Assembly: GCA_907165135.1 (NCBI GenBank)
Contig: OU015567.1
Span: forward strand, 2,480,001 to 2,544,000
DNA: 64,000 nt
Source of the DNA: Oikopleura dioica
Taxonomy: Eukaryota; Animalia; Chordata
Reading direction: 5' to 3'
Shown: positions 5,346-35,827 of the stretch, one piece after another
How positions within the stretch are numbered: the first letter of the stretch is position 1
Layout of the letters: every line of letters begins with the position of its first letter
Notes under the pieces: generated by a model
Told to the model about the DNA's origin: nothing
Databases searched by the model: none
What the model saw: the letters and a program-made list of their open reading frames with translations, nothing else
Position numbers and translations under genes: made by a program

Positions 5346-8300
5346 ATGTTGCGGCTCTTGGGTCTCGGCTTTCTGGCATCGGTTTCGGCCCTGTTGACCG
5401 AAGCAGGAGTCGTCGTCCTCAAAGACGATGAAACTTGGGACAAGTACATCGATCCAGCCAACAACAAGGTCGGCATGATCGAGTTCTACCAGCCCTGGAG
5501 CGGCGAATGCCAACAATTCAAGCCAATTTACGAAGAAGTTGCCGCGGAATTGTTGGAGCACGACATCCGAGTGGCTAAAGTTGACATAACTGAATTCAAG
5601 GCTAGGGTTCGAAATCTTATAAAAGCTGAAAAAAATTCTCTACTAACTTGGTAGTACCAAGAATATCAATAAGTTTTTTGAAAAAATTTCGACCCAAAAA
5701 CAAAGCTGAAACAAAAAATCGACGAAATGGAAGTGACCGAGTACCCAACCATCTTTTCCGTCAGAAAAGGCGAACTCATGCTCTACAACGACATCCGAGA
5801 CGTCGCTACAATCAAGCAGCATCTTTTGGACATGCGAAGTTCCAAGTGGAAGAAGCCAGAAGAGCTCGTCGTTGAATTGACAGACGAAAACTTTGAAGAC
5901 TATGTCAACGGAGAAGAATTCACAGTCGTCGAATTCTACGCCCCCTGGTGCGGCCATTGCAAAAAGCTCATTCCAGAATACGAAGCCGCCGCAGCTGCAC
6001 TTGCCAAAGACGGAATCAAGCTTGCCAAGATCGATGCGAACAAGTACACTGAGCTCGGTCAGCAATACGGCGTCAGCGGTTACCCTACTTTGAAGATTTT
6101 CAGAAGAGGCAAGGAATTCGACTACAATGGGCCGAGAGAGCGAAAGGGAATCATTTCTTATGTCTTGGATCAGGTCTCCCCGCCGAGCAAGGAAGTGGAG
6201 GTGAAGAAAGAATACAAGAAGATTTTGGAGAAAGGCACTAAGAAGGGTCCAGGTAGGCTTTTCTCTGTCTTAATCCGTCACTTTGGCTTCTAGGATTGGG
6301 CTTAATTGCCTTCTTCGAAAACCCCGAAGACGAACTGATCAACAATTATGCCGATGCCGCCAACGATCTCCGCGAAGACTTCGCTTTCTACCACGTCAAT
6401 GGCGAAAACGTCGCCGCTTTCGGAGGCAAGAACGGACACCTCCGACTCAGCCAGCCTACTCATCTTCAGTCAAAATATGAGCAAAAGGTATTTACCTTAG
6501 TATAACTTTAGTTATTCTTGAAGCTTTATCGTTTATTGATCAATGAATTTCAAACAGAAGGAGTGTTAACAGTAAAGAGGAGTACTTAGCAGTTGTTAGA
6601 GCGTCAAATTTAACCAGCAATCATTGCAAGATAGTAAACAAACGCTATAATAATACAATTTTGGGGGAAAAGAGCTTTGAATTTCTGCTTACCTAGTATA
6701 AAAATGACAAACAGCGCGAAAATCGTATAGGTCATGCATCTTTCATAACCAGACCAGCTTTCCTGCTCTTCTGCGTCTGAAAATTCTTTAAAGTTTCCAT
6801 TCATTTTTCGCTTGTGTTTTGGTTATTTTTATATTATGGTGTTTTTGAGGGTTTGGGCTCACATTTAGGGCGTTTGTATTTCAAATCATCCTCGGGGACG
6901 AAGTCGTAAATTGACACCTGATTAGGGTTTTGCTTTGGAGCTCCTTTTTGCTTCGATTTGTGAGTATTTATGTCGGATTAATTCGAGACAAAATGAACCT
7001 AGATGCCCCTTACTGTTCTTTTTCGAGCCTATATTCTGTAAAAACTCCCCTTTTCTGACTCAAAATCTCATTTTTATCATTTAAAATCAATCGAAATTGT
7101 AAGTTTACCACATAAAAGTAGCGCTAGAATTTTCTATGAACAATATTTTTAATCCATAACTTTTCCGTTGTCATTCTTTAAAAAGATTCTCGATTGTTGT
7201 TTTTTCTCTTTATTTTTTCCAAATAGACTTATTGAAAATTAAATTCCTCGTCAGTCTGCCGACCACAGAAAGTAATCCTCGCTGTCAATATTTTCCTGAT
7301 CCTCAGCCTCGGATTATCCAGCGAGGACATATTGCGAACTTTATCGTGGATCACTTCAAACGCCACTTTTTCTTGCTCATTTTGTGTGCAAAGCTCTTAG
7401 AGCACAAAAAGCTCATCATTTCTTCATCTTTTTTGGCCCCGTAAGCTGCGTAAAATCCACGTTTTTTGAACGAGCGATGTTATCCCACGAAAAGATACAT
7501 TTTTCTTGTTCAATTTAACATCGTGTTTATTGAAACCAAGGTTTTGAGCCATCAAATGTTAACTAGTAAGTTGGGGTTCGGGAAACTCTGCATCAACAAA
7601 AGGATCGATCGCGAGCGACTTGTGATTCTAGAGGTCAACAACGCTCACCTTCTTTGATTTTCTAAATGGCAAAAGTTTTCGCTAAGATCGGAGATTAAAT
7701 CCGATTTCGAAGAAAAAAGAGCTCTTTTTCGAAGCGGGAAAATTGAAATGAAAGGGGGTTTTTAATTGCTCGGTTATGAGACCCTTCTTTTTAGAAGAAG
7801 CAAAAATTATGCATAGATTAAATACGTGACTCAGCAATTTAATCTCACCTGCATAAATATTCGCATCGACGGGCGGAATTGCAGGGCCGTTCAAGTCTGT
7901 TCCCTTTTCTAATCCTCTTACAAGGGAGAACCAGGTCATCTTTTATTCGTCTTTCTGTCTTCTTAGCTCCTTAAAATTATTCTTATTATTGTAATTTTCA
8001 AAAAGCAGATGTTTCGCAATGGAGAATTTGGGCTCCGAAAGCAAGCATATTGTCAAAAATCATCAATAATTACTCCTTTCAAAATGAAAATCGATAATTG
8101 AAAATCAGAGGGGAAAATCTTAATTGTTCTTTTTTCAGTTCTTGGATTTGGACTTGTCCGGCAAAAGCGCAGAAGACATCAAAAACTGGGTGATTGAGCA
8201 CACTCTTCCTCTCGTCGGAGCCGTTACTCCCGCCACAAGGTAAAAATTATCGATAATCGTTGCTGATGTACTCGGCGGAATGAACGTCATTTTCGACGTA

Positions 8301-28847: not shown

Positions 28848-30089
28848 CTATCCGCTTAAATGCTTCATGCAAACGCAGATATGCTCGTGATCGTTATAAT
28901 CTAAAAAAATCATGAAAAATATTCGAATAAGAGTCTTTATAAATACCATGCTCTTTGCATTCTTTCCAGTCGCCATCAGGTTTCGCCTGGAAGTAATAAA
29001 CAATTGGATCATCTTCATCTTCAAAGTAGTCGCAGTCAATATTTTCTGACGTCGCTACATGTTCTTGTGGGACGGGTTCTGAGAATTCTAGATTTTCATC
29101 CAACCAGTAATGCTTTTTAGGGTTCCGCACGATTGGGACAGAGACTTTAAATTTACCAAAATTTTTTTATTCTACTAAAAATGACTAGTAGAATCCATTT
29201 CCGATCCTAGTTTCTCCTAAAAGCCATTTTTTCTGTCATTTTAAAGCTATTTAAAAATACAAAGTTTAATTAGCTTCTGCGCTCTGATTGGTCAGCTGCG
29301 CAAGGGACTTTTTCTAGACTGAAGATTCTTCCATCTGAACAACACAGTCAGAAATTCGACCAATCAGCGCGCGGGAAATGAAAATGTTAATGCTTATGAA
29401 AACTTTAATTGATCAGCCCACAAAAAGTTCGCTGAGTTATAATTTCATTTTAAAACAAAAACTAAAAAGCATTGCTTTTTCTTCTCGGTCTTGTATCCCA
29501 TCCACACTTTTTCCTCGTGACAATTTGCAGCAAGAAACTTTATTATATTCTCAGCCGTTTCCTCAGACTCGATTTGAAGTGGTTTATCTTCATATGAGCG
29601 ACAGTAGCTAACACATTCGTCGAATTGCATCCAGGACTTTTCAAAATCGTACGCTGGAATCGATGATGATGTCGTCGATCATTTCGTTGTTGTTGTGAGG
29701 AGAGTTGCTGTTGTTGACTTCGTAGTTGAAGTATTTGATGTTGGGGAGGATGGTGCTGTAGTTGTTGTCGCTGATGTCGAAATCGCTGAAGTGGAAGTTG
29801 CCGAACTTTGTGAGGTTGCTGATGACGAACTAGATATTATTGAAGTTCTAGTGGAGCTTGAAGTATAAGCTGAAGTATTCATAGTGGTCGAAGAATGTGT
29901 TGTCGCTGATGTCGAAATCGCTGATGTGGGAGTCGGTGAACTATGAGAGGTTGAAGTTGTCGAGCTTGATATTGTTTGAGTTCTTGTCGAGCTCGGAGTA
30001 TTCGCTGATGTATATTTTGTTGTCGAAGAAACTGTTGTTTCCTCAGAAGCGGCAGTTTCTTCTAAAAGGACAACATCTTTCTTTTCCAT
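28848..30089 (-). pseudogene. Ser/Thr-rich (mucin-like) stalk + C-type-lectin-like domain gene with an in-frame TGA; 5' end uncertain
   Basis: The S/T-rich ORF 30089-29679 continues in frame past TGA (29681-29679) into KSWMQFDECVSYC...VWMGY. Later exons give HYWLDE...C...GDWKEC and HICVC* (28848). Confidence 0.6.
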
Positions 30090-30630
30090 ATAAAGCGGTT
30101 CCAGTAAAACTGTTCCAACAAGACAAAATCAAATTGCGTACAAAAAAATCTGTAACCATTTTCTCTTTTTTTTCCGGAGACATTATTTATAATACTTAAG
30201 ATCAGGTCATTCGAATGTTTTATCCTTTGCGCTTTATTTGTTTATGCGGAAGAGCAGCTGCCTAAGATACATTTTCCGCGAGTATTTATCAATGATTTTA
30301 TGCGCTTTTTGTCAGGCAAGAGCAAGGTCTTTGCGAATAAACATCGCCTTTCGAATGGTTGTTCCTAGAAAACAATCAAAGATTTCAAATCATAAAATTT
30401 CTTTCAATATTACTCCTCAAAAAATAATCTCTTTGAAGAGTTCGCCTTACATCTCGCAAAAACGGGAAATTACAATATCTGACATGCGTCTAAAGAATCC
30501 GGCTTATCCTTCCTTACCTTATTTTCTCGCACCTCCACTCTCTAATGGACGCGACATTTATATAATCGACAGATTTCCGTCTTTCAATCAGAATCGAAGT
30601 CCGAATAAAAAAAGGAGAAAGGATAAGAAA

Positions 30631-31021
30631 ATGAACTTTTTAAAACTTTTTGGTGTTTTCGGAACCATGGTTTCTGCAACGGATTTTTCGCTGACTGACA
30701 TGGCCAATGTCTATCAGGTAATAATTTCTAATAATCAGTTATAATTATGAAACCTTCTAAATTAACCTTAATTTCATCAAAAACATAATTGAGGTGCAAG
30801 AAATAGACTGAGAAATGAAAAATATTTGAATACAAAACACTAAATGCTCTTAATTATGACTCTATTTTGAAACAAAAAGATCAATTTAAAAAACATGTTT
30901 TCAGAAACGCAGCGGCTACTCGATGCCCTTCGTCAAGCGGGCCAACATTGGCGACCCGATGCTACGACGATTCATTGCGCTCATGGATCAGTTCGAAGCA
31001 GAACAGGCTGCTCGAAATTGA
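30631..31021 (+). CDS. Putative neuropeptide/peptide-hormone precursor (67 aa)
   Basis: Exons 30631-30717 and 30905-31021 with a canonical GT-AG phase-0 intron give MNFLKLFGVFGTMVSA-TDFSLTDMANVYQ-KR-SGYSMPFV-KR-ANIGDPML-RR-FIALMDQFEAEQAARN*. Confidence 0.72.
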
Positions 31022-32608
31022 AATTGAAATTTTTCTTTGAATAAATGAATTTTTCTTCTCTTTTCTTTTTTTGCTTGAATAGTTTCTAAAAATTTAAAAA
31101 ATTAAGCGTTCTCTTTTTTTTTGTTTTCTAAGCTTCGCTTATCAGAGTGTTCTAGCTGTGAACACAAATAGCGATAGAGCCAGGGCCCGTCTTTCGCGTA
31201 AGAAGAAAAACCGATGAAGACAAGAAGATATTCTAGAGCTTCTAAAAGAATATTTATCTATCATTTCTTACCCATCGAAAATGGACGAGTTCAGAAAACC
31301 TCGATTCAGATGACGCCTTTTTCCAACAAAGCCCAACAAAAGAGGGTCGAAACAGAATTTTTGATGCAATGACTTTTATCAGTAAAACTTCACCGTCGAA
31401 GATTTTCCAAAAGCGATCTTGCCCTCTTTCGACTCGTAAACTTGGCCTTTTAAAAGTCCCATTTTCAACTTCCCGAGTTTCCAGTTTGAAAAGTGATCAT
31501 TAGCGAAGTTCTGAAGCTTTACGAAGACCGCGATAGCTTATCGATAGATAGGGCCTGAAAATTATGGTCGCGAATTTGAACCCTATTTTGACTTGTATAA
31601 CGATAACCGTAGCGGTGGTCGCCAGTCGAGATTTTGGCAATAAAAATGCTCTTCTGTATCTCTTCCTCGGATAATTGCTCTTCTGGAAAAGAGGTTGAAT
31701 CGGTACGACACTATTTTACCTAACCCTAACACAGAACGAAAAAAATGATAAAAAACGAAGAAAATCCAATTTCAACCAGCTCATCTCCGGGTGACTTCTA
31801 AAGAAGCGGCGAGTAAAGGTCAATTCCACCGACCGCAGCTGGGTGAAGAAAGCACCAAAAACAACCTCACAACCGGAAATGAATGTGTTGCATCAACCTT
31901 TTTTCTTGCAAGAAGGATAAGGATACGGATTAAGTTGACAAAAAGATGGGATAATTATGACCAAAATTTTGGTCAGATTTTAGACCAATAAGATGGTGGA
32001 GTTTGGCTGACTTTAATAATTGGCCAATAAGATAACGAGTCGTCGCAGAATTTCAAATTTTTTTATAGATTTTGTCGACTCGAAAATCCACCCAATTCGT
32101 AGCTTTTTATCTCTCTCCTCAAAATTTATTACTCTCCAAATTTTGGTCCAAAATTCACGTTATTTCTAGTTTCCTTTCCGCAAACACATGTTTGCACTTT
32201 TCTGGTTCTTTTTATCCGACGTCATGTTTCTTCAGAAAAGCGCGTTTGTTTTGCGTTTGCGATAAGCTTTCTCCTTTGCGAACCGTAAACTCGCCCTCAA
32301 AATACCAAATCTTTCCAATTCTTCTTTCTGCCAATCAATTCTTTGTCAATCAAGACGAAAAATACGAGTCATTTTTAATTGTCGCGAAAATAAAAGCGCG
32401 GCCACTTGTCTCTCTCTTAGAAAGTGTAGGACACGGATTTGAATATGTCAAAATCAAAAGGCAATTATCATCTGCTTATCTGACAAGCTGCATGAAAGAT
32501 AGAAGCCGCCATGTCAAGCGACATTTGAATTGAAACTGTCAATTTTTAACTGCAATATTTTTTTGTAATAAAATAAATTTCTTGGTATATATAAGTCGCT
32601 GGATCTTT

Positions 32609-32927: not shown

Positions 32928-35827
32928 CTCCAGAAAAGACGAAGATCAAACAACGGAGGTCTCCTTAGTGGAGGCTAAGTCAAAGAGGAAATTTTTCGAA
33001 CACAGTTCTTTTGAGCTTATGTCAGCATGAACTTGAGCTCAAGACTGGCTGAAATCGGAGCGAAGCGATTATCCTCAGAACTCAACGGGAACGTTTTATA
33101 CACGCTTCTTGAGCTTCACAGTTATCGTGAATTGTAAGAAGCCTGGAAGTGCGGGGGATCAGGAAAGATCAGTCAATGGCAAAATCATTTCAGTATAGCT
33201 CGAGGAAACTCACTAGAAGTCTGAGAAAAAATAGGCTCCTCACGAAAACGAATAAATGATTCGAGCGAAAAGCAATGGAAGTCTTTTTTGTCAGTTTTAT
33301 TATCAGATTCATTGAATGGAATAATTTGATAAAGAAATAAATTCGATCATAACAACTCCCATTTTGCGGAAAAAGTTTATCGACAATACTCAGACTCTCA
33401 ATTCAGTTCAATTTGTCCCTGTCTGCCCGTTTCCTCCGCGCTCAGAGGGCGCTCCTGAGCCACGAGCGCGCGTTTTCCGCATCCCTTTTTCTTCTGATCG
33501 TGACTTTGAGGCGGCGCCAGAGAGCGCGTTTTCAGCGGGTTGAGGCGAAGAAATAAATTTGAATTTCTCTCGCTCTACTAAATTTTTTGCCATCTTGAAT
33601 CAGAAACAGAGGCGTTTCGGCATCGAAAAAAGATTGCATCAAGTTTTGCTTTTTGACGTTTTGAAGAAACAAAATTTTCAGAGAAAATCAGATTTTGAAA
33701 AAATAAAGAAGATTTGAATAGAAAACGAAAACGACCGGTTAAATAAAAATCGAGAGTGTAAATTTGAATAAGAAGAAAGAATTCTTTTACGAAAAAGCTT
33801 AATCTAAAAAGGTAATTCGACAAATGATTTTCAATTCTGAAGAACTAGAATTTTGCTAAAACAATCAGTTTTTGACGGGAAATTATAGAGGATCGGAAAA
33901 ATAGGGATTCAAATTTAAAGAGGTGCAATTTGTTTTTGATTGGTTGACTAAGACAATAGCGCGTTCTGATTGGCTTAGAAAAGCCCTATAAGATCTTGGA
34001 CCAAGGCGCTCGAAAAACGAAAATCAGCATGAAAAATCTTTCCGCCTAATGAAAATAAGCATCAATCCCGCCAAGCGATATTAGATTCTCCGGGAACACA
34101 ATTCAATTAATCTGATCCCGCGCGACGCGCTTTCGAAATTTCTAGAGCTCCCGTAGCGAAACTAAAAACCCGCGGAAAATCAAACATCTGTCAATCTTCC
34201 ACTCTCTTCTTTTTTAGAAAAATGAGGCGGCAATTGAAGTACCATAAAATTTTAGGGTTTTAGGAAAATCTGGTTATTATTTTTCTTAAAAAAATTTAAA
34301 ATGGTCGTTATTTTTTCTTGATTTAATGTATTATAATTTAAGGGCATCATCGTTATAAATTTCTCTGATCAAAATTATAGGAAGTCCCTTAAGAATTCGT
34401 TTTTTTTTATTTTGAAAATCAAGCGTTAGGAGCCTAGAAAATGCCATGTTATCCCAGACGGGTTAAAAAGACCAATCCAAGGTTAGAACCTTATTTTGAA
34501 CGTGACAGTCGGCGATGAACTTTTGGTAAATCTGCGTAAAGTGGATTTCTCCAGAATCACAATCTCGCTCTACTTTCGACCGCAGAATCGACATTTATGG
34601 GTCCTGTCCCTTAATTTCTGCCTCCCGTGGCAGATTTCTGTCATCAATTTATTATGCAAAGCAGCCTTTTTAGAAATTAAAAAAGGAATGAAAGAAAATC
34701 GAGTTATCAAACTGACAGGTGCTTGATTTTACGGCGGGATTATCCGATTTATGAGTCATTACTTACGAGAGTCGCAGTAAAATTATCGATAAGGTTTCGA
34801 TAAAATTAAAACTCAATCGAAATCGGCTGATTTCTAAAGGGAAATGGATTAGATGAAAGATCGTTAATTTTTTGAAGAGAACGCGGTTCGTTTTTGGGAA
34901 AACATAAAATGTTCGATTATCGCTTTAATGAGTTGGTTAAACAAGAAGATAAAGTGTCGCTGTACTGACTCAAATCACTTTTTACTGTAAAAGAGCGCAT
35001 CTTAATTCAGTCTTACTAGAATAAAGGGCTTCCTGAAAAACGAGTTTAAGGGAGTCAATCCGTTAATCCTAAAAATGAAAGCCTTTCCCCTTGCCAGTCG
35101 CAAGTCGCAAGTTGGAAGTCGCAATTTGCAAATCTGAAAATCAATCCCTTCAAACTCCGCAATAGCGAGTCAGAGGAAACGCGAGAGAATAATGCTTACG
35201 TATGTGGTCTTGCGTTTCGTTTCTTATCAGGGTTGGAAAATGACCACGGTCGAGGGGCTTTCCTTTATCACATTAAACTACTTAAGATAGAAGCCACTTT
35301 ACTTATGACCTATTTTAAACGGAAAATCGAGTCGTTTTTTGCCAGAAATTTTGTTTTCTCAAAGAAGATCCTCAAAAAACTTGTCCTTTTTGAAGCTCAT
35401 TTCTTCTCCCCGAAAACGAGCGCTTTCGAGCGCGCGGGGCCGTCAAGCTGCATTTTCATTCCGCGCTGGCGGCTGGTGGATATATTTACACACCTAACTG
35501 ATCTATAATTTTCGCCTCTCGCCTACTCCTTAACCCCTTAGCGCGCCTTCTAAAGCGTGTCCCGCGCGGGCCGCTGTTCAGGCCGCTGACGCCGGTGCGT
35601 CTTCGCTACGCGGAAATGACCAGTTGCTCAGTTTCCTTTAACACGCATCTCAAACATGCCTGTAGCAAGCTTTTTGAACTCGAAAACCTACAACCATCCT
35701 CCTCGTCAGGTACTAATTACTACGAAGCAAGTGCAACGCAACAAACTTATCTAATCATACATTACTTGAGGCTCTTAATTAAAATTCAGTAAAACAAAGT
35801 TTTCGAGACAAAAAATAAAATTCATTG

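What the first reader, a model, noticed from the sequence alone, without database searches (positions are those of the whole stretch)
30631..31021. Hidden two-exon neuropeptide-like precursor: KR-SGYSMPFV-KR
Splicing one canonical intron gives a 67-aa protein with a signal peptide and three dibasic sites. Predicted products are TDFSLTDMANVYQ, SGYSMPFV, ANIGDPML and a C-terminal 16-mer. The first KR is created exactly at the exon junction. It is invisible to the ORF track, and I do not recognise the peptides as a known family, so it may be a novel tunicate signalling peptide.
Basis: partly seen in the sequence, partly recalled or inferred. Interest (0 to 1): 0.75.

Follow-up and report, generated by a model that had tools for sequence, protein, structure and literature searches.

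The report
Second larvacean GYSMP-peptide precursor gene
The two small exons are a real gene of the plankton tunicate Oikopleura dioica, already in GenBank without a name, and it most likely makes a secreted precursor cut to release one short signalling peptide (SGYSMPFV) related to a five-copy peptide gene on another chromosome.

Summary
It is not hidden from annotation. It equals GenBank CAG5110109.1 (O. dioica OKI2018_I69 chr2.g4545), an unnamed model with no Pfam match.

There are 8 such models in this window against about 4 in shuffles.

Independent features rescue it:
- a TATA box 72 nt upstream and AATAAA 19 nt after the stop
- exon 2 at 55% GC against 22% in the intron
- coding-like codon usage

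The decisive result is that KR-(S)GYSMPFV-KR is a copy of the unit GYS[M/I]P-x-x-KR. That unit occurs five times in a row in a second small gene on contig C4 of the same genome. The scan had already noted that gene on other DNA (s1-534430). Its uninterrupted counterparts occur in marine assemblies (P0004-P0008). Motif codons differ at 19 synonymous positions and 1 non-synonymous position, while the flanks are unalignable.

So the gene is a diverged single-copy paralogue in an undescribed larvacean peptide family. The other three predicted products have no support as active peptides. Transcription, processing, neuronal expression and orthologues of this copy could not be tested here.

The parts
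30559..30565 (+). TATA-like box (TATATAA), 72 nt before the ATG. There is no other ATG between it and 30631.
   Evidence: Only 4-5% of ATGs in 264 kb have such a box at -120..-36. The C4 paralogue has TATAAAA about 69 nt before its ATG. The function is inferred.
30631..30678 (+). Exon 1, part 1: predicted 16-residue signal peptide, with cleavage after V-S-A. The Kozak context has A at -3.
   Evidence: heuristic only. It shares K-[LI]-F-G with the paralogue's signal peptide, which is not significant on its own (E=0.087).
30679..30717 (+). Exon 1, part 2: 13-residue acidic spacer (TDFSLTDMANVYQ), followed by the donor CAG|GTAATA.
   Evidence: No counterpart in the family. Codon score is ambiguous at -1.2 bits.
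30718..30904 (+). Phase-0 intron, 187 nt, GT..AG, 22.5% GC, with acceptor TGTTTTCAG.
   Evidence: In-frame stops lie at 30742-44 and 30887-89, so exon 2 cannot be reached without splicing. Not repeated elsewhere in the genome.
30905..30910 (+). First dibasic site, KR (AAA CGC), the first two codons of exon 2.
30911..30934 (+). Predicted active peptide SGYSMPFV. Its core GYSMPFV is one unit of the GYS[M/I]P-x-x family.
   Evidence: the pattern hits 7 times forward, with 0 in the controls; hhalign E=9e-7 against the family profile; 19 synonymous against 1 non-synonymous motif codon differences.
30935..30940 (+). Second dibasic site, KR, conserved with every unit of the paralogue.
30941..31021 (+). 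ANIGDPML, RR, a 16-residue acidic tail and TGA. Probably spacer or associated peptide, or possibly a decayed second unit.
   Evidence: MAFFT aligns ANIGDPML-RR with G-YSMP-x-x-KR and the tail QFEAEQ with QFDDEE. hhalign instead aligns it with the acidic spacer after unit 3. Nucleotide identity to the paralogue here is at chance, 0.20-0.27.
31040..31045 (+). AATAAA polyadenylation signal, 19 nt after the stop.
   Evidence: About 5% of stops have one within 40 nt. The function is inferred.

Best explanation
This is a real two-exon gene of Oikopleura dioica (Okinawa assembly OKI2018_I69, chr2; public model g4545, CAG5110109.1). It encodes a 67-residue prepropeptide. It is a diverged, single-unit paralogue of a five-unit precursor gene on contig C4, whose units read GYS[M/I]P plus two hydrophobic residues, each followed by KR.

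Inferred mechanism:
1. The 16-residue signal peptide takes the product into the secretory pathway.
2. A subtilisin-like proprotein convertase cuts after KR30-31 and KR40-41.
3. A carboxypeptidase removes the basic residues.
4. The non-amidated octapeptide SGYSMPFV is released as an extracellular signal.

The N-terminal 13-mer, ANIGDPML and the acidic tail are most likely spacer pieces.

Shown here: the gene structure, its public annotation, the paralogy, and maintenance of the peptide motif against saturated synonymous and flank divergence.

Inferred: transcription and splicing, secretion, cleavage, bioactivity and cell type.
For: - The model is identical to a public AUGUSTUS model. That model was built with RNA-seq intron and exon hints (PMC8008620).
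- TATA box, A at -3, canonical splice sites and AATAAA are all in place.
- Exon 2 has GC 0.553 against 0.225 in the intron. Its codon score is +4.4 bits, like real coding chunks (mean 3.1), and in the top 3.3% of null frames.
- The genome-wide DNA pattern for GYS[M/I]P-x-x-[KR]R gives five clustered hits on C4, this gene, and one chance hit. The reversed-pattern control gives none.
- The C4 gene reads signal peptide, then three units, an acidic spacer, two units and an acidic tail.
- A profile search found uninterrupted five-unit counterparts, P0004-P0008, in ENA/JGI/Logan marine assemblies. Units and KR sites are invariant while spacers vary.
- Exon 2 against that family profile gives hhalign probability 91%, E=9e-7. 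BLASTP of P0001 against the C4 first half gives E=5e-6.
- Motif codons of this gene against the C4 units differ at 19 synonymous and 1 non-synonymous positions. The flank downstream of the unit is at 20-27% nucleotide identity.
- At least six loci with convertase P-domains are present in the genome.
- The protein language-model neighbours are mostly small prohormones: PDH, galanin, DH31, NPF, PrRP, spexin, NPS. This is a lead only.
Against:
- No orthologue of this particular copy was found in 1.84 billion representatives, the 5.8 billion word index, or JGI metagenomes. Constraint on this copy is therefore inferred only from comparison with its paralogue.
- Exon 1 has no significant similarity to the family, and its codon score is ambiguous.
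- All three forward frames are open over exon 2, and codon statistics do not separate them well. The frame is fixed by the motif match, not by codon usage.
- The unit carries an extra N-terminal Ser, which no unit of the C4 gene or of P0004-P0008 has.
- The signal peptide is short, only moderately hydrophobic, and was not scored by SignalP.
- 7B2 was not detected, but that search rang nowhere, so it is uninformative.
Confidence: 0.7

Rival explanations
1. The gene is a real duplicate but is decaying or non-functional. Under this reading it is a young pseudogene-like copy of the GYSMP precursor that still has an open frame, or a transcribed copy whose product is not processed into an active peptide.
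For: - It has one unit instead of five, with an atypical extra Ser before Gly.
- The rest of the protein is unalignable with the family.
- No orthologue of this copy was found anywhere, whereas the five-unit gene has several counterparts.
Against: - Everything outside the unit has diverged to chance-level identity, yet the seven motif residues, both flanking KR sites, the start codon, the splice sites and the stop are intact. Motif codons show 19 synonymous against 1 non-synonymous difference. That is the pattern of selection on the peptide, not of neutral decay.
- Exon 2 keeps coding-like GC3 of 0.63.
- The promoter-like and poly(A) signals are present.
Confidence: 0.15
2. The precursor is a multi-product neuropeptide gene giving four distinct bioactive peptides: the 13-mer, SGYSMPFV, ANIGDPML and the C-terminal 16-mer. 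All three dibasic sites are used.
For: - There are three dibasic sites at a regular 10-residue spacing.
- Pairing of the basic residues is unlikely by composition, P=0.006.
- MAFFT aligns ANIGDPML-RR with a GYSMP unit, keeping the Pro, the two hydrophobic residues and the dibasic site.
Against: - Only the GYSMP unit has a conserved counterpart.
- hhalign places ANIGDPML and the tail opposite the variable acidic spacer of the family.
- The two octapeptides share 30% of nucleotides, which is chance level (my count).
- RR followed by Phe is, from general knowledge of convertase sites, a weaker site than KR.
Confidence: 0.1
3. The model is a chance open reading frame that a gene predictor happened to accept. 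Under this reading it has no product.
For: - The signal-peptide-plus-dibasic pattern is at chance frequency.
- It is an orphan in protein databases.
- A long non-coding-like open frame (30193-30741) runs into exon 1.
Against: A chance 51-residue frame containing GYSMP-x-x-KR, identical in its motif to a five-fold repeated unit elsewhere in the genome, is expected about 1e-8 to 1e-7 times (my estimate). The pattern control gave 0 hits genome-wide. In addition there are the TATA box, AATAAA, the GC island and the codon score.
Confidence: 0.05

Closest known systems
Five-unit GYSMP peptide precursor of Oikopleura (G000:C4:3884137-3884400; earlier scan note s1-534430; marine counterparts P0004-P0008). 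It is unnamed and has no literature.
   Same: - A signal peptide starting M-x-K-[LI]-F-G.
- The unit G-Y-S-M-P plus two hydrophobic residues followed by KR, and then Ala after one unit.
- An acidic spacer or tail with a Q-F-acidic motif.
- No amidation Gly.
- A TATA box about 70 nt before the ATG.
- Tiny gene size.
   Different: - One unit instead of five.
- An extra Ser between KR and Gly.
- A phase-0 intron before the unit, whereas the C4 coding region has none.
- A 13-residue spacer between the signal peptide and the unit. In the C4 gene the first unit follows the signal peptide directly.
- An RR site that the family lacks.
- No counterpart of this copy in other assemblies.
Ciona-specific non-amidated neuropeptides Ci-LF, Ci-YFV/L and Ci-NTLP, and their tunicate-only GPCR clades (PMC6475428).
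   Same: - Short peptides (Ci-NTLP-2 has 8 residues).
- Tunicate-restricted, with no similarity to peptides of other phyla.
- The same paper places presumptive O. dioica sequences in the urochordate LF-receptor clade.
- From my memory only: these peptides are non-amidated, are cut from precursors at dibasic sites, end in hydrophobic residues such as LF, YFV or YFL, and one Ci-LF peptide reads much like Y-x-S-M-x-L-F.
   Different: - No detectable precursor similarity. No Ciona protein appeared in the exhaustive or profile searches.
- SGYSMPFV ends in P-F-V, not Y-F-V or L-F.
- The exact Ciona peptide sequences could not be checked in the paper library, so this is a resemblance of style, not membership.
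Generic multi-copy neuropeptide prohormones, such as enkephalin or FMRFamide-type precursors. The nearest language-model neighbour is the pigment-dispersing hormone precursor (PF06324).
   Same: - A signal peptide.
- Peptide units bracketed by KR.
- Acidic spacers.
- Units conserved while spacers drift.
- Small size. Atlas feature score 0.90 to the PDH cluster.
   Different: - No Pfam match to PDH or any other family.
- Only 136 of 256 features are shared, below the range of true family members.
- No amidation signal.

Membership tests
Larvacean GYSMP-peptide precursor family (unnamed; C4 gene plus P0004-P0008) | Core unit G-Y-S-[M/I]-P followed by two hydrophobic residues | tested here: met
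   GYSMPFV lies at window 30914-30934.
Larvacean GYSMP-peptide precursor family (unnamed; C4 gene plus P0004-P0008) | KR immediately after each unit, and KR or the signal-peptide cleavage site immediately before the Gly | tested here: inconclusive
   The C-terminal KR is present. The N-terminal KR is present but separated from Gly by one Ser, unlike all units.
Larvacean GYSMP-peptide precursor family (unnamed; C4 gene plus P0004-P0008) | Significant profile similarity of the precursor | tested here: met
   hhalign of exon 2 against A2: probability 91%, E=9e-7 over 23 columns. Exon 1 alone is not significant.
Larvacean GYSMP-peptide precursor family (unnamed; C4 gene plus P0004-P0008) | Five tandem units in a 3 + spacer + 2 layout | tested here: not met
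   There is one canonical unit. ANIGDPML is at best a decayed second one. I therefore file it as a diverged paralogue, not an orthologue.
Larvacean GYSMP-peptide precursor family (unnamed; C4 gene plus P0004-P0008) | N-terminal signal peptide | tested here: inconclusive
   It passes a crude n/h/c-region and -3/-1 rule heuristic. No trained predictor was available.
Neuropeptide / peptide-hormone precursor (generic) | Processing machinery present in the genome | tested here: met
   Nine exon-level matches to the convertase P-domain PF01483, at six or more loci. The 7B2 search was uninformative.
Neuropeptide / peptide-hormone precursor (generic) | Expression in neurons or endocrine cells, and release of the cleaved peptide | not testable with these tools
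Ciona Ci-LF / Ci-YFV/L / Ci-NTLP precursors | Detectable precursor homology or the family's C-terminal motif | tested here: not met
   No Ciona protein appeared among the hits of the exhaustive search or the profile search. The peptide ends in PFV. The Ciona peptide sequences themselves could not be verified from the library.
Pigment-dispersing hormone (PF06324) | Match to the Pfam model | tested here: not met
   No Pfam family at E up to 10. Only a feature-space neighbour.

The most novel reading that the evidence does not exclude
SGYSMPFV and the GYSMP-x-x heptapeptides of the C4 gene form a two-gene, larvacean-specific neuropeptide system. This system would be the fast-evolving counterpart of the ascidian Ci-LF / Ci-YFV peptides. 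It would signal through the tunicate-only GPCR clade in which presumptive O. dioica LF-receptor sequences have been placed (PMC6475428). The single-unit gene would supply a ligand variant with its own receptor preference or cell type.
Probability: 0.2. Interest if true: 0.6.

Novelty: new member of a known kind. Interest (0 to 1): 0.4.

Why it matters
Larvacean neuropeptides are almost uncharted. The paper library holds no report of GYSMP-type peptides, and no paper that names both Oikopleura and neuropeptides treats an Oikopleura peptide repertoire.

A two-gene family gives concrete, cheap targets. One gene has five near-identical units and the other has one variant unit. The targets are synthetic peptides, in situ probes, and mass-spectrometry masses. 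My calculation for SGYSMPFV is [M+H]+ about 887.40.

These would serve three aims: linking peptides to the tunicate-specific orphan GPCR clades, mapping peptidergic cells in a chordate with a very small nervous system, and following how peptide genes duplicate and shed units in a rapidly evolving genome.

It also shows that a signal peptide plus dibasic sites by themselves occur at chance frequency in this AT-rich genome. Such candidates need an independent anchor such as a paralogue.

Tried and rejected
- Pfam on each exon, on P0001, on the upstream open frame and on the alternative +2-frame ORF 30895-31041: nothing.
- Rfam on 28-34 kb: nothing near threshold.
- Own-genome protein searches with exon 1 and with exon 2: only self. 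The short motif was below that tool's reach, and the paralogue was found only with a degenerate DNA pattern.
- Exhaustive HMMER search: besides self, two hits (P0002, P0003) that are repeat proteins scoring by summed weak matches, without dibasic sites. Rejected as spurious.
- JGI metagenome scans, by protein and by a K-R-x-G-Y-S-M-P-x-x-K-R pattern: 20 pattern hits, all unrelated prokaryote-like sequence.
- The 168-codon TTG frame running into exon 1, used as a probe for called ORFs from other Oikopleura DNA: no hits. Its codon score is non-coding-like at -27.9 bits, so I treat it as a chance open frame.
- A looser YSMP-x-x-[KR]R scan: no third gene above the control level.
- The seventh pattern hit (L034) is the SNW1/SKIP gene, a chance match.
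- tblastn of the family proteins against the whole window: no better signal-peptide exon than exon 1.
- A CRH-like reading of the helical tail: considered from memory and dropped. There was no Pfam hit and no amidation signal.
- Supplements of the two O. dioica genome papers: no mention of g4545.
- The Ciona peptide sequences could not be verified in the library.
Exons were searched by reference. The spliced protein was handled only as the public record P0001, which the search of the contiguous stretch 30890-31018 returned.

Full report
**What is there.** The window is G000:C5:2480001-2544000 of a 64.28-Mb, 19-contig genome. That size and contig count match the Okinawan Oikopleura dioica assembly OKI2018_I69 (PMC8008620). 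The protein hit names chr2 of that assembly.

- ATG at 30631.
- 29 codons to 30717.
- A 187-nt GT..AG intron.
- 38 codons from 30905, with TGA at 31019-21.

The intron is phase 0, so the first KR (AAA CGC) is simply the start of exon 2. It is not made by the junction. Unspliced, exon 1 runs into a stop at 30742-44, and exon 2's frame is closed upstream by TAA at 30887-89. The peptide region can therefore only be translated after splicing.

**Not hidden.** I searched the contiguous stretch 30890-31018 by reference. The only hit, P0001, is a 67-residue public protein. It is CAG5110109.1 / UniRef100_A0ABN7SXP0, named only 'Oidioi.mRNA.OKI2018_I69.chr2.g4545.t1.cds'. Its sequence equals exon 1 plus exon 2. 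That annotation was made by AUGUSTUS with RNA-seq intron and exon hints. Whether this model had hint support I could not see. From here on the spliced protein was used only by that id.

**Is the pattern more than chance?** No. A scan for 'signal-peptide-like ATG, GT..AG intron of 35-400 nt, 50-120 residues, at least three [KR]R sites' gave these counts of start sites:
- 8 in this window. Two of these are true signal peptides of other genes joined to false splices.
- A mean of 4.15 in 20 dinucleotide shuffles.
- 21 in the adjoining 200 kb.

**Independent gene signals.**
- TATATAA lies at 30559-65, 72 nt before the first downstream ATG, which has A at -3.
- AATAAA lies at 31040-45, 19 nt after the stop.
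- In 264 kb only 4-5% of ATGs and about 5% of stops have such neighbours.
- Exon 2 is a GC island: 0.553 against 0.225 in the intron and 0.35 in the flanks. Only 2.3% of 114-nt windows reach that level.
- GC by codon position in exon 2 is 0.61/0.42/0.63.
- A codon log-odds model was trained on open frames of at least 200 codons from the next 200 kb. It gives exon 2 +4.4 bits, against a mean of 3.1 for real coding chunks and -4.3 for null short frames. That is the top 3.3% of the null.
- Exon 1 scores -1.2 bits, which is ambiguous.
- The 146-codon open frame upstream of the ATG scores -27.9 bits, which is non-coding-like.

One caveat applies. All three forward frames are open over exon 2, and codon usage separates them poorly.

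**Orphan by ordinary searches.**
- Pfam found nothing.
- Rfam found nothing.
- The gene is single copy by DNA and by exon-wise protein search of its own genome.
- The exhaustive HMMER search of 1.84 billion representatives returned itself and two repeat proteins. Their scores are sums of weak repeated matches without dibasic sites. I reject them.
- JGI metagenomes gave nothing.
- The ESM Atlas holds the sequence with a low-confidence model (pLDDT 0.51). Its nearest feature neighbours are small prohormones: PDH at 0.90, then galanin, DH31, NPF, PrRP, spexin and NPS. The theme persists without the signal peptide, at lower scores. This restates the architecture and is only a lead.

**The anchor: a paralogue.** A word look-up in the scan's notes turned up s1-534430. 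It describes a precursor elsewhere in this genome with five GYS(M/I)Pxx heptapeptides. I tested this myself.

The degenerate DNA pattern for G-Y-S-[M/I]-P-x-x-[KR]-R hits the genome seven times on the forward reading. It hits zero times on the reverse reading and zero times in the reversed-pattern control. The seven hits are:
- five within 184 nt on C4 (3884179-3884362);
- this gene;
- one chance hit inside an SNW1/SKIP-like gene.

A looser scan found no third gene above control.

The C4 locus (L028) has TATAAAA about 69 nt before its ATG. It then reads as follows:
- a 14-residue signal peptide starting M-K-I-F-G;
- immediately after it, GYSMPFL-KR-GYSMPLF-KR-GYSMPMI-KR;
- an acidic spacer;
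- GYSIPLF-KR-GYSMPLF-KR;
- an acidic tail.

In the assembly the last two units are one base out of frame, after a run of five C.

**The family in other assemblies.** A profile of P0001 plus the two C4 pieces (A1) retrieved P0004-P0008 from ENA, JGI and Logan marine assemblies. These are 74-116-residue proteins with the same five-unit layout in one uninterrupted frame. Units and KR sites are invariant and spacers vary. The family is therefore real and conserved across several related lineages.

**Relation of this gene to the family.**
- Exon 2 against the family profile: hhalign probability 91%, E=9e-7.
- P0001 against the first C4 half: BLASTP E=5e-6, spanning K-[LI]-F-G of the signal peptide and the unit plus KR-A.
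- Exon 1 alone is not significant.
- At the seven fixed motif positions (G, Y, S, M, P, K, R), this gene differs from the five C4 units at 19 synonymous and 1 non-synonymous codons out of 35 comparisons.
- The 45 nt downstream of the unit are at 20-27% identity, which is chance level.

The peptide and its cleavage sites have thus been held while everything else diverged to saturation. This also fixes the reading frame of exon 2.

The rest of the protein has two competing alignments. MAFFT puts ANIGDPML-RR opposite a unit, keeping the Pro, the two hydrophobic residues and the dibasic site, and puts QFEAEQ opposite QFDDEE. hhalign puts the same stretch opposite the variable acidic spacer. Either way these parts are not conserved peptides.

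**Mechanism.** The steps are inferred by analogy with prohormone processing.
1. Signal-peptide cleavage after Ala16.
2. Convertase cleavage at KR30-31 and KR40-41. At least six loci with convertase P-domains exist in the genome.
3. Carboxypeptidase trimming.
4. Release of non-amidated SGYSMPFV.

Use of the RR site, the fate of the extra Ser, the producing cells and the receptor are all unknown.

The nearest described systems in style are the Ciona-specific peptides Ci-LF, Ci-YFV/L and Ci-NTLP. They are short, tunicate-restricted, and act on tunicate-only GPCR clades. The LF-receptor clade contains presumptive O. dioica sequences (PMC6475428). No precursor homology to Ciona was detected. I could not verify the Ciona peptide sequences from the library, so I claim resemblance only.

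**Limits.**
- No orthologue of this single-unit copy was found, so its age and constraint rest on the paralogue comparison.
- No RNA, SignalP or NeuroPred result is available.

**Verdict.** The gene is real and already in GenBank as an unnamed model. It is best read as a second, single-unit member of an undescribed larvacean GYSMP-peptide family that this scan had already met at the C4 locus.

Noticed in passing
L028:1583-1590 (G000:C4:3884261-3884268): In the five-unit GYSMP gene the frame breaks at a run of five C followed by TGA. Units 4-5 continue one base out of frame. The near-identical marine protein P0004 reads straight through (…KRAPLTRDELDQ…). The break therefore looks like a homopolymer error of the Nanopore-based assembly rather than a real disruption.
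   Followed up: partly
window 28951-30101, minus strand: There is a divergently oriented neighbour gene. It has coding-like exons at 28951-29145 and 29469-29657. The second gives a weak partial C-type lectin match (PF00059, E=0.012). A 136-codon Ser/Thr-rich, mucin-like first exon starts at the ATG at 30089. Its start lies about 540 bp from the peptide gene's ATG, so the two may share a promoter region.
   Followed up: partly
window 30193-30741, plus strand: A 183-codon stop-free frame runs through the intergenic region into exon 1. That is unexpectedly long for 35% GC. Its codon score is non-coding-like (-27.9 bits), and it has no Pfam or database match. Similar unexplained long open frames lie at 32069-32530 and 35050-35505.
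   Followed up: partly
window 30867-31044, plus strand: All three forward frames are open across exon 2. They include a 49-codon ATG-started frame at 30895-31044, whose stop lies inside the AATAAA. It has no database or Pfam match, and I take it for a by-product of the GC-rich exon.
   Followed up: partly
L034:1500-1680 (G000:C5:6159314 onward): The one pattern hit outside the family (GYTIPLDKR) lies in an exon that reads like the SNW domain of SNW1/SKIP. I recognised this by eye and did not test it.
   Followed up: no
window 5346 and 16462, plus strand: My signal-peptide scan also picked up two apparently genuine secretory starts. One is a thioredoxin/PDI-like gene at 5346.
   Followed up: no
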